From assembly GCA_037447605.1 (NCBI GenBank), contig CM074822.1:1077492-1141491 (forward strand): a stretch of 64,000 nucleotides of DNA. The letters are read 5' to 3'. Shown in pieces: positions 34,569-37,500 of the stretch. The notes under the pieces were generated by a model, which saw only the letters and a program-made list of their open reading frames with translations, did not search any database and was not told the origin of the DNA. Source of the stretch: Zygnema circumcarinatum SAG 698-1b. Lineage: Eukaryota; Plantae; Zygnematophyceae. Position 1 is the stretch's first letter, and each line of letters begins with the position of its first letter. A program made the position numbers and the translations under genes.

Positions 34569-37500
34569 TTACTCTCTCGCTGCGAACACAAACTGGCCTG
34601 ACAAGAACGACACATTGGCCCCTGATTTGGAGGAAAAGGAAGAGTCCGGTCCCAAAAGTGGCTCCCAACCGTCCACATCTTCCCCTGGCGACGGCTGCCG
34701 AACTGCCATGTCTCGCATGTCAATTGCTATCAATCGGCTCACAACTTCGGTCATGTCAGGACGGTCGATACTCAGCCTCTCCACACATTCCGCGGCAATT
34801 ACTGAAAAGATTCCCAAAGCATCGTCCAGGACCCCATCGAGTGTGCGAAGTTGGGGGTCAACAATTGAGTCAAATTGCTTGAGCTTGATGTATGGGGTAG
34901 CCTGAAACCATCCAAAAAGCAGAAGTTACGTCATATTAGTACACATGGGTAGCCTGAAACCATCCAAAAGCAGAAGTTACATCATATTAGTACACATGGG
35001 TAGCCTGAAACCATCCAAAAAGCAGAAGTTACATCATATTAGTACACATGGGTAGCCTGAAACCATCCAAAAAGCAGAAGTTACATCATATTAGTACACA
35101 TGGGTAGCCTGAAACCATCCAAAAAGCAGAAGTTACATCATATTAGTACACATGGGTAGCCTGAAACCATCCAAAAAGCAGAAGTTACATCATATTAGTA
35201 CACATGGGTAGCCTGAAACCATCCAAAAAGCAGAAGTTACATCATATTAGTACACATGGGTAGCCTGAAACCATCCAAAAAGCAGAAGTTACATCATATT
35301 AGTACACATGGGTAGCCTGAAACCATCCAAAAAGCAGAAGTTACATCATATTAGTACACATGGGTAGCCTGAAACCATCCAAAAAGCAGAAGTTACGTCA
35401 TATTAGTACACATGGGTAGCCTGAAACCATCCAAAAAGCAGAAGTTACATCATATTAGTACGCATATGTTGCCATGAGTCTATGTTTCTTCTGTGAGTAC
35501 TGCCATACACCATAGTAACTGGTAATGTATGTACGACCTGAACCATGTTGGTTCAGAATGTGAGGGGTTAGACAGCTTCAAGTAGACACGGGAAGAGTGA
35601 AGTGTCGGATGGGGACATGAGAGAGGAGAAGAGGGGAAAGAGGGGAGAGAGGGGAGAGAGGGAGAGAGGGGGGAAAGGGGAGAGAGGGGAGAGAGGGAGG
35701 AAGGGGAGAGAGGGGGGAGAGGGGAGAGAGGGAGAGATGGGAGAGAGGCAGAGAGGGGAGAGGGGAGAGAGGGAGAGAGGGGAGAGAGGCAGAGAGGCGA
35801 CAGAGGGCAGAGAAGGTGGAGGGCAGAAAAGGGTGAGGAAAGAGCGAGGAGAAGAGAGAGAAACAGGTCCATGTCTGAAGGAAGGAAACAGGAGAGAGAA
35901 ATTTGCTCCACTCACCCAAGTTGCCAGACTAGTCCTATCTCCCGTTTCCTCCGAGATCAAGATTGGAGGTTTCCCAGTGATCAGCTCCAATAGGACAACT
36001 CCGAAGCTGCAGTTACCACCAACCATTCCTTAGACTACTGAAGCTCAAGCTTTTACTCAATATAGAAAGAAAGTATACGAGGGGATGGAAAGATGTATAG
36101 CATGTGATGAACATGTAGACAAAATCTGACATGTGACATAACGTCACACATCACACAGAATGAGATGGGTTGTGCAGAAATAGGTTGCCCGAGCAATTGT
36201 ACCTTCATGGGGCAAAAGACTCGCATCAAAACAGAAGAGCGAGATGTTTTTTTCGAACAGGACTAACCTGTATACATCACTCTTTGTCGTCACTTCAGTT
36301 GTTAGAAAATACTCAGGATCGATATAGCCTGAAAGGAAACCACACAAATACAAGAAAGTCATGGATGTGTTGTTTAGGATGTATACAGTTAAACACATGA
36401 ATAGAGGCCGAGGAAAGAAGGGAGAGAGACGTGTGAAGAGGTGAAGTGGGGGAAGAGAAACAGAGAGTGGGAGACAGATTGAGAGGAAGAGCAGAGGGAG
36501 CAGAAAAGAAGCGAGGCGAAGAAGAGAGGGAGAAGTGAGAGGCATGCGAGAGAAGGAAAAGAGTGGGAGAGACAATCATAACAGAGGGGAGGGAGGGAGG
36601 GAGGGTGGAGGGAGGGAGGGAGGGAGGGAGGGGAGGGGAGGGAGGGAGGGGAGGGAGGGAGGGAGGGGAGGGAGGGAGGGAGGGGAGGGGAGGGAGGGAG
36701 GGAGGGAGGAGGGAGGGAGGGAGGGAGGAGGAGGAGGGGAGGAGGGGAGGCCGGGAGGGGGAGGGGGAGGGGGGCAGGGGGAGGGGAGGGGGAGGGGGGC
36801 GGAGGGGGGAGGGGGAGGGGGGAGGGGAGGGGAGCGTGGGAGGGGAGGGGGAGGGGAGGGGGGAGGGGAGGGGGAGGGGGGGAGGGAGGGAGGGAGGGAG
36901 AGGAGGGAGGGAGGGAGGGAGGAGGGAGGGAGGGAGGGAGGGAGGGAGGGAGGGAGGGGAGGGAGGGGAGGGAGGGAGGGAGGGAGGGGAGGGAGGGCGG
37001 GAGGGAGGGGGAGGGGGAGGGGGAGGGGGGGGATGGGGAGGGGAGGGGGGAGGGAGGGAGGGGAGGGAGGGGAGGGCTGGAGGGAGGGAGGGAGGGAGGG
37101 AGGGGAGGGGAGGGAGGGGAGGGGAGGGAGGAGGAGGGAGGGAGGGGAGGGAGGGAGGGAGGGAGGGGAGGGAGGGAGGGGAGGGAGGGAGGGAGGGAGG
37201 GAGGGAGGAGGGGGGGAGGGGGGAGGGGGGGGAGGGGAGGGGGGGGTGGGAGGGGAGGGAGGGAGGGAGGAGGGAGGGTGGGAGGGGAGGGAGGAGGGGA
37301 GGAGGAGGGAGGGAGGGGAGGGGAGGGGAGGGGAGGGGAGGGAGGAGGGTGGAGGAGGGGAGGAGGGAGGGAGGAGGGAGGGAGGGGAGGGAGGGAGGGA
37401 GGAGGGAGGGAGGAGGGGAGGAGGAGGGAGGGAGGGGAGGGGCAGTGGGAGGGAGGGAGGGAGGGAGGGAGGGGCCCGGAGGGAGGAGGGAGGGGGAGGT

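What the first reader, a model, noticed from the sequence alone, without database searches (positions are those of the whole stretch)
34895..35463. Eleven tandem copies of a complete 3' splice site in front of the last kinase exon
Seen: each 52-bp unit has a TACTAAT branch-point match, a CTTCTGCTTTTT tract, TTTCAG, and the first 7 exon bases GCTACCC. Only the most distal AG (34902) gives W|[16 protein letters not shown]. Each of the ten upstream acceptors gives A-T-H-V-Y-stop, removing kinase subdomain XI. A CAT(A) microhomology at the unit boundary suggests slippage. Inference: the spliceosome must bypass ten essentially identical acceptors, or array length acts as a tunable dial (VNTR) on functional receptor level. 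I know of no described case like it.
Basis: partly seen in the sequence, partly recalled or inferred. Interest (0 to 1): 0.8.

Follow-up and report, generated by a model that had tools for sequence, protein, structure and literature searches.

The report
Eleven tandem splice acceptors, one usable
In an algal receptor-kinase gene, a 52-base piece holding a complete intron-end signal plus the first seven bases of the last coding exon is repeated eleven times, so only the last copy can give a working protein; human genes show the mirror-image arrangement at intron starts, and I could not measure which copy the cell uses.

Summary
A 52-bp x 11 tandem array (34895-35465, minus-strand gene, 98% identical) reiterates branch-point motif, pyrimidine tract, TTTCAG and the exon's first 7 nt. 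Only the last AG (34903-34902) joins exon "...SLATW" to "ATPYIK..."; the other ten give W-ATHVY-stop. Homologous Closterium kinases read W|ATP across the same junction, so the distal site is the functional one. The gene is an apparently intact LRR receptor kinase.

Acceptor use could not be measured. One RNA-like run holds a word share equal to exons only (0.31 against 0.30), a weak hint that the mRNA lacks the array.

Best reading: a very young junction-spanning minisatellite whose upstream copies are pseudo-acceptors. This is the acceptor-side mirror of the donor-side minisatellites of human F7, IFI6, CBS, LMNB2 and PDGF. I found no acceptor-side case in the papers searched.

The scan's first readers noted similar arrays elsewhere in this genome (PRDA1, ABCD1, UPF2; unchecked). 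The homologous Closterium gene has its own duplication of the same junction. A lineage-wide mutational habit therefore fits better than a dedicated dosage dial.

The parts
34895..35465 (-). 52-bp x 11 tandem array. Each unit holds TACTAAT (branch A 34 nt before the junction), a second GTAAC (24 nt before it), a pyrimidine tract, TTTCAG and the exon's first 7 nt GCTACCC.
34902..34903 (-). Distal AG, the only acceptor that keeps the reading frame (W|ATPYIK...).
   Evidence: colinear with Closterium P0005/P0018 in alignment A3
34569..34901 (-). Last coding exon (110 codons plus TAA at 34571-34569), kinase subdomains X-XI and a C-terminal tail.
   Evidence: 46% identity to Closterium P0005
34902..35915 (-). 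The 1014-nt intron: GTGAGT donor, a C/T-rich low-complexity 5' half, a unique stretch, then the array as its 3' half.
35916..36006 (-). Preceding exon, (S)[12 protein letters not shown]...DRTSLATW (subdomain IX).
36268..36328 (-). Exon (G)[19 protein letters not shown] (activation segment end / APE equivalent).
39375..39465 (-). Exon with the DFG motif (AKVADFGLL...).
40036..40184 (-). Exon with HRDVKSEN (catalytic loop).
40653..41009 (-). First kinase exon (GEGGFGVVY ... WAVKRS ...); Pfam Pkinase E=6e-16.
41525..41650 (-). Transmembrane exon (...[28 protein letters not shown]).
   Evidence: read directly
46925..48214 (-). N-terminal ectodomain exons: LRRNT_2 cap and LRR repeats.
34016..34055 (-). 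Five tandem CTTTCAGG octamers (acceptor-like). They are a possible end of a 3'-UTR intron whose candidate donor TTAG|GTGAAT lies at 34565|34564, just after the stop.
   Evidence: sequence reading only, not tested

Best explanation
This is a very young minisatellite. It arose by tandem duplication, then amplification, of a 52-bp segment straddling the boundary between the last intron and the last coding exon of an intact LRR receptor-kinase gene. Each unit takes along the branch point, the pyrimidine tract, the AG and 7 exon bases, and then re-enters intron sequence that is closed in all frames. The functional mRNA can therefore only be made from the last, exon-adjacent AG. I infer that this AG is the one mainly used and that the ten upstream copies behave as pseudo-acceptors inside the intron. 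Only at the last copy does U-rich intron-type sequence (40% T, 39% GC) give way to real exon (25% T, 53% GC), with whatever exonic enhancers and downstream signals define it. In addition, every upstream AG lies only 18 nt upstream of the next unit's branch point. By my recollection, that is where U2 snRNP proteins anchor. Some leak to the nearest upstream copies, giving W-ATHVY-stop transcripts, is plausible by analogy with IFI6 and CBS. The array is most likely a by-product of a high rate of tandem duplication in this algal lineage rather than an evolved regulator. Shown here: the structure, the coding consequences, conservation of the distal reading, and the recurrence of junction duplications in a relative. 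Inferred: which AG is used and why.
For: Only the distal AG keeps the frame. Exon pieces laid end to end are colinear with Closterium RLK P0005 at 50/67/46% identity, with W|ATP at the junction (A3); P0018 reads SRW|ATPKI. The gene looks intact: Pkinase exons with K, HRD and DFG, LRRNT_2 and LRR, and a TM exon. The composition step occurs only at the last unit. The array RNA is less structured than shuffles (z +7.3), so upstream sites are not masked by folding. Run X1 (guessed RNA) holds 0.31 of sampled words. Distinct exonic 31-mers make up 0.303 of the stretch, and exons plus array would make 0.39. The lineage habit shows in Closterium contigs L001/L003. They carry an independent 131-133-bp duplication of the same acceptor plus exon start, and also arrays of [exon end + donor] and of a whole exon, in two strains. 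The window itself holds about 25 tandem arrays in 64 kb. Donor-side precedents in which only, or mainly, the exon-adjacent site is used are in PMC1557585.
Against: There is no junction-level RNA evidence. The X1 share differs from the exons-plus-array expectation by only about 2 standard errors. Its 'RNA' label is a guess, and a divergent strain's DNA could also hold exon words only. In mammalian cis-competition and scanning experiments the intron-proximal 3' site is often preferred (my recollection; the F7 paper's discussion cites conflicting globin duplication results). That would predict use of the first copy. The U2-anchoring argument is unverified and rests on my memory of the literature. 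Other arrays in this genome are first-reader notes, not checked.
Confidence: 0.6

Rival explanations
1. Dosage dial. A substantial share of transcripts is spliced to upstream copies and yields truncated or degraded products, so array length (a VNTR) sets the level of functional receptor.
For: All eleven cassettes are essentially identical and unstructured, so each should be competent. In IFI6 and CBS the pseudo-donors nearest the exon are used alongside the authentic site (PMC1557585). Pure intronic minisatellites differ in copy number between two Closterium strains, so such arrays can be polymorphic. If the candidate 3'-UTR intron (34564 to about 34020) is real, the early stop would lie more than 330 nt upstream of a junction and would be open to nonsense-mediated decay (sequence reading).
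Against: No usage data and no copy-number data across strains. X1's word share fits exons without array words. Similar arrays noted in unrelated housekeeping genes of the same genome (unchecked) argue for a mutational habit rather than gene-specific regulation. The units are too young (7 identical) to show selection for or against anything.
Confidence: 0.2
2. Recent gene inactivation. The first (intron-proximal) acceptor wins, nearly all mRNA carries the array and a stop, and the receptor is on its way to becoming a pseudogene.
For: A proximity or first-come preference for the upstream 3' site is known from vertebrate duplication experiments (my recollection; conflicting reports are cited in PMC1557585). 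The array is so young that downstream decay would not yet be visible. Three RNA-like runs of the species hold none of the words (X6-X8).
Against: All other exons and catalytic motifs are intact. X1's share fits exon words without array words. The same arrangement noted in other genes of this genome could hardly be tolerated if proximal copies won as a rule.
Confidence: 0.07
3. Assembly artefact in copy number. The locus holds a duplication, but far fewer than eleven units, or a single one.
For: Units 3-9 are identical over 364 bp. The assembly has a 10-N gap 7 kb away (42314-42323). An earlier follow-up in this genome judged a three-fold exon repeat to be an artefact (s1-323112; unchecked by me).
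Against: Four distinct variant units sit at both ends (units 1, 2, 10, 11). They require at least five units and are not what a collapsed or looped graph produces. The same assembly runs through 2.7-kb (GGGA)n and 1-kb (GA)n arrays. Diverged, hence real, junction duplications exist in Closterium.
Confidence: 0.08

Closest known systems
Human F7 intron 7 minisatellite (37-bp VNTR, 5-9 copies), PMC1557585
   Same: [quoted passage not shown] Only the exon-adjacent copy gives the normal mRNA. The copies are competent but silent.
   Different: F7 reiterates 5' splice sites at the start of the intron. Here complete 3' cassettes (branch point, tract, AG) are reiterated at the end. F7 usage and polymorphism are measured, and here neither is.
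Donor-side minisatellites of IFI6 (6-16), CBS intron 13, LMNB2 and PDGF (listed in PMC1557585, introduction)
   Same: They are natural arrays of 10-25 reiterated splice sites. In LMNB2 and PDGF only the authentic site is used. In IFI6 and CBS the two pseudo-sites nearest the exon are used as well, which is a model for possible leak here.
   Different: All are donor arrays in human genes. IFI6 units are in frame (12 nt, my recollection), whereas a 52-nt unit here brings a stop.
Engineered tandem duplications of 3' splice sites (globin constructs cited in PMC1557585 refs 40-42; plant rbcS constructs of Lou, McCullough and Schuler 1993, cited in PMC2327258, not readable here)
   Same: They ask the same question: which of several identical acceptors is chosen.
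   Different: These are two copies in artificial constructs with conflicting outcomes. Here there are eleven copies in a native gene of a streptophyte alga.
NAGNAG tandem acceptors (my knowledge)
   Same: More than one AG is available at an intron end.
   Different: NAGNAG sites are 3 nt apart, share one branch point and tract, and stay in frame. Here the spacing is 52 nt, each AG has its own branch point and tract, and upstream use truncates the protein.
CFTR intron 8 (TG)m(T)n tract (my knowledge)
   Same: A length-polymorphic repeat at an acceptor tunes productive splicing, which is the precedent for a 'dial'.
   Different: That is a microsatellite inside one pyrimidine tract, not a reiteration of whole acceptors.

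Membership tests
Junction-spanning minisatellite with reiterated splice sites (F7 IVS7 type) | Tandem array whose terminal monomer contains the exon-intron boundary | tested here: met
   The last unit ends with the exon's first 7 nt; array 34895-35465, exon starts at 34901.
Junction-spanning minisatellite with reiterated splice sites (F7 IVS7 type) | [quoted passage not shown] | tested here: met
   All 11 units carry the same tract-TTTCAG|GCTACCC. Single-base variants occur in four units, three of them outside the branch-point, tract and AG signals; unit 10's lies inside the pyrimidine tract (T4 for T5).
Junction-spanning minisatellite with reiterated splice sites (F7 IVS7 type) | The sites are 5' splice sites at the intron start (all described members) | tested here: not met
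   Here they are 3' cassettes at the intron end, the mirror image.
Junction-spanning minisatellite with reiterated splice sites (F7 IVS7 type) | Only or mainly the exon-adjacent site is used in vivo | tested here: inconclusive
X1's word share of 0.31 equals the exon-only fraction of 0.303, which is only a hint.
Junction-spanning minisatellite with reiterated splice sites (F7 IVS7 type) | Copy number polymorphic among individuals (VNTR) | not tested
   No second assembly of this organism could be reached.
LRR receptor-like kinase (RLK/Pelle) | Protein kinase domain with the catalytic K, HRD and DFG | tested here: met
   Pfam Pkinase on two exons; [14 protein letters not shown] and ADFG read.
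LRR receptor-like kinase (RLK/Pelle) | LRR ectodomain with N-cap, and a single transmembrane segment | tested here: met
   LRRNT_2 and LRR_1/4/8; hydrophobic exon followed by RRRRS.
NAGNAG tandem acceptors | AGs 3 nt apart sharing one branch point and tract | tested here: not met
   Spacing is 52 nt (51 once), and each AG has its own TACTAAT and tract.
Regulated unproductive splicing (poison acceptor coupled to decay) | Alternative site that introduces a premature stop | tested here: met
   WATHVY-stop from each upstream AG.
Regulated unproductive splicing (poison acceptor coupled to decay) | Poison site conserved across species and demonstrably used | tested here: inconclusive
   Closterium has its own, non-homologous duplication of the junction. 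Usage could not be measured.

The most novel reading that the evidence does not exclude
This alga, and perhaps desmid-like streptophyte algae in general, carries many minisatellites that reiterate complete splice sites in working genes. Either its spliceosome obeys a strict exon-adjacent-site rule for acceptors as well as donors, or array length is a heritable, fast-mutating dial on productive splicing of genes such as this receptor kinase.
Probability: 0.2. Interest if true: 0.75.

Novelty: new variant of a known kind. Interest (0 to 1): 0.5.

Why it matters
How a spliceosome chooses among equally good sites is usually studied with engineered duplications, which have given conflicting answers. 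Natural donor arrays (F7 and others) have served as models for 5' site choice. An eleven-fold array of complete branch-point, tract and AG cassettes in an intact gene would be the equivalent natural model for 3' site choice. It also sits in a lineage close to land plants, where intron recognition rules are little known. If similar arrays elsewhere in this genome hold up, one RNA-seq data set could test a positional rule across many genes at once.

Tried and rejected
No reads evidence was possible afterwards. Whole-window tandem-repeat listing was a local computation, and later repeat work started at 35715.

2. Protein collections as a route to cDNA contigs. I tried the last exon alone, the representative library, and profiles built from Closterium scaffolds plus my exon pieces (A3, A7). 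No protein of this organism was found. Several scaffold alignments (A1, A2, A4, A5, A6) were misaligned by MAFFT and dropped.

3. Exact look-ups of two ATG-started ORFs of the locus found nothing.

4. An exact search for the spliced junction in metagenome contigs found nothing.

5. Masking of upstream sites by RNA structure was rejected: the array folds worse than shuffles.

6. A dispersed repeat or transposon origin was rejected: the unit occurs only in the array.

7. A clean CAT(A) microhomology origin is not supported (and direct reading).

8. A search for other exon or junction duplicates in this gene found only low-complexity repeats.

9. Literature searches for an acceptor-side natural array found none. 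The key plant paper (PMC360058) is not held.

Full report
**Observation**

On the minus strand, Tandem Repeats Finder reports one array at 34895-35465: period 52, 11.0 copies, 98% matches, no indels. A 30-nt core of the unit occurs 11 times in the 64-kb window, all inside the array, against 0 expected in shuffles.

Reading the units in register shows the same parts in each:
- TACTAAT, with its branch A 34 nt before the junction
- a second GTAAC, 24 nt before the junction
- the tract CTTCTGCTTTTTGGATGGTT
- TTTCAG
- GCTACCC

Units 3-9 are identical. Unit 1 has GCG where the others have GTG. Units 2 and 11 have ACG where the others have ATG. Unit 10 has lost one T and is 51 bp long. Both base differences are CpG/TpG differences. 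Variants at both ends around a uniform core are what a real, recently amplified minisatellite looks like.

**The gene**

The array is the 3' half of a 1014-nt intron (35915-34902) of a minus-strand gene. I traced these exons by reading:
- first kinase exon, 41009-40653
- HRD exon, 40184-40036
- DFG exon, 39465-39375
- a 3-kb (GGGA)n-filled intron
- GYIDPEY exon, 36328-36268
- exon 36006-35916, ending ...DRTSLATW with donor TGG|GTGAGT
- last coding exon, 34901-34572, followed by TAA

Pfam finds Pkinase in the first two kinase exons. It finds LRRNT_2 and LRR repeats in upstream exons. A hydrophobic exon followed by RRRRS lies at 41650-41525. This is therefore an LRR receptor-like kinase with its catalytic K, HRD and DFG in place.

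**Coding consequences**

I joined exon ...SLATW to each of the eleven AGs and translated. Ten joins give WATHVY-stop. Only the AG at 34903-34902 gives [17 protein letters not shown]... and 110 codons to the stop. Each unit is closed in all three frames. Use of any upstream copy would remove subdomains X-XI.

**Which reading is the functional one**

The nearest proteins in a library of 1.8 billion representatives are kinase fragments from desmid algae. P0005 comes from assembly GCA_949281275.1. One preprint calls that assembly Closterium, and the protein collection names the source Closterium sp. NIES-53.

My three last exon peptides, laid end to end, align colinearly with P0005 at 50, 67 and 46% identity. 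LATW|ATPYI falls on LAKW|ATPAI (alignment A3). A second Closterium protein reads SRW|ATPKI. Two further relatives are gene calls on unspliced DNA that begin ...Q|ASPYVK. That is an acceptor at the same position. The distal AG is thus the ancestral and functional junction.

**What I could not get**

The direct test is to count junction reads.
- The look-up of sequencing runs listed one run guessed to be RNA (X1, word share 0.31), four runs of unknown kind (0.63-0.78), and three RNA-like runs holding nothing.
- I then tried to reach cDNA contigs through the protein collections, through exact-product look-ups, and through an exact spliced-junction search in metagenome contigs. Nothing from this organism is held there.

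The only RNA-side hint is arithmetic. Of the 1304 distinct 31-mers in the stretch searched, 30.3% lie wholly in the three exons and 8.7% in the array. X1 holds 31%, which fits exons without array words. With 139 sampled words, that is only about two standard errors from the 39% expected if array words were present. X1's kind is also a guess.

**Why the last copy is probably the one used**

This step is inference, not measurement.
- The array is intron-like in composition (40% T, 39% GC), while the last exon has 25% T and 53% GC. Only the eleventh AG sits at an intron-to-exon transition.
- The array RNA is less structured than shuffled controls (z +7.3), so folding does not hide the upstream sites.
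- Each upstream AG lies 18 nt before the next unit's branch A. By my recollection, that is inside the region where U2 snRNP proteins anchor upstream of a branch point. Only the last AG would be free of a downstream neighbour. This idea is testable but unverified.
- The described donor-side arrays behave in the corresponding way. In F7, LMNB2 and PDGF only the exon-adjacent site is used. In IFI6 and CBS that site plus its two nearest copies are used (PMC1557585). By symmetry I expect mainly distal use, with possible leak to units 10 and 9.

Against this, vertebrate duplication experiments gave conflicting answers (same paper, discussion). The plant study I wanted (PMC360058) is not held.

**A habit of the lineage**

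The window holds about 25 separate tandem arrays. First readers of this scan noted similar junction arrays elsewhere in the same genome. I did not check these notes. They include:
- about 24 acceptor cassettes in PRDA1
- eight donors in ABCD1
- acceptor copies in UPF2
- a four-fold donor junction at 22836-23151 of this window

The homologous Closterium gene gives independent support that I could test (contigs L001 and L003, two strains):
- It carries its own duplication of the very same junction: an AG plus 82 nt of exon start, period 131-133, 87-95% identity. The upstream copy is frameshifted, and the annotated protein uses the downstream copy.
- It also carries a 131-bp x 2.5 array of exon end plus donor.
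- It carries a 145-bp x 2.5 array of a whole exon.
- It carries a three-fold repeat of the subdomain-XI piece with its donor.

The 131-bp and 145-bp arrays have the same copy number in both strains, while the purely intronic 20- and 21-bp minisatellites differ; the same-junction duplication and the three-fold repeat were examined only in L001.

All of this favours a high rate of tandem duplication plus splicing that tolerates it, rather than a device evolved for this receptor.

**Rivals**

- A dosage dial through unproductive splicing remains possible (about 0.2). It would gain weight if the candidate 3'-UTR intron exists, running from the donor TTAG|GTGAAT just after the stop to five tandem CTTTCAGG at 34016-34055. 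The early stop would then be visible to nonsense-mediated decay.
- Recent inactivation (about 0.07) is less likely.
- An inflated copy number in the assembly (about 0.08) is also less likely. The four variant units require at least five units, but the count of identical core units rests on the assembly alone. An earlier follow-up reported a repeat artefact elsewhere in this genome.

**Novelty and verdict**

The phenomenon as a class, a minisatellite spanning a splice junction and reiterating an identical site, is known for donors. Five searches of the paper library found no natural acceptor-side array. I therefore file it as a new variant of a known kind. It is real in the sequence, mechanistically interesting as a natural test of 3' site choice, and undecided at RNA level.

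Noticed in passing
window 34016-34055 (minus strand) and 34564-34565: There are five perfect tandem CTTTCAGG octamers, each an acceptor-like TTTCAG|G, about 510 nt downstream of the stop. A good donor-like TTAG|GTGAAT lies right after the stop, and C/T-rich intron-like repeats fill the space between. This is possibly a 3'-UTR intron ending in a second, short-period acceptor array.
   Followed up: partly
L001:3904-4118 (Closterium sp. NIES-53): The homologous intron | last-kinase-exon junction is independently duplicated there: an AG plus 82 nt of exon start plus a 49-nt C/T tract, period 131-133, 87-95% identity. The upstream copy is frameshifted by a 2-nt indel, and the annotated protein uses the downstream copy.
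   Followed up: partly
L001:1471-1832, 2032-2364, 4105-4564; L003 likewise: The same Closterium gene has a 145-bp x 2.5 array of a whole exon with flanks, a 131-bp x 2.5 array of exon end plus GT donor, and a three-fold repeat of the subdomain-XI piece with its donor. The 145-bp and 131-bp copy numbers are equal in strains NIES-53 and NIES-54 (the three-fold repeat was examined only in L001), while the intronic 20- and 21-bp minisatellites differ (8.6 against 7.7, and 7.5 against 11.5).
   Followed up: partly
window 22830-23095 and 20688-20957: An 84-bp x 3.2 array (about 80% identity) sits in a GC-rich gene. All four copies keep GCCAG|GTCA, a donor-like junction, despite the divergence. A mirror copy lies in the other palindrome arm.
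   Followed up: no
window 36587-39342: The intron between the DFG and GYIDPEY exons of the kinase is filled by about 2.76 kb of (GGGA)n on the plus strand, C/T-rich in the transcript. Other introns of the gene are likewise C/T-rich microsatellites in the sense strand.
   Followed up: no
window 42314-42323: A run of 10 N (an assembly gap) lies inside a (CCCT)n intron of the same gene. Repeat tracts in this assembly are therefore not all resolved.
   Followed up: no
window 31827-32871: A 25-bp x 42 tandem array (84% identity) lies just downstream of the gene. It gives long open frames in several phases by its periodicity alone.
   Followed up: no
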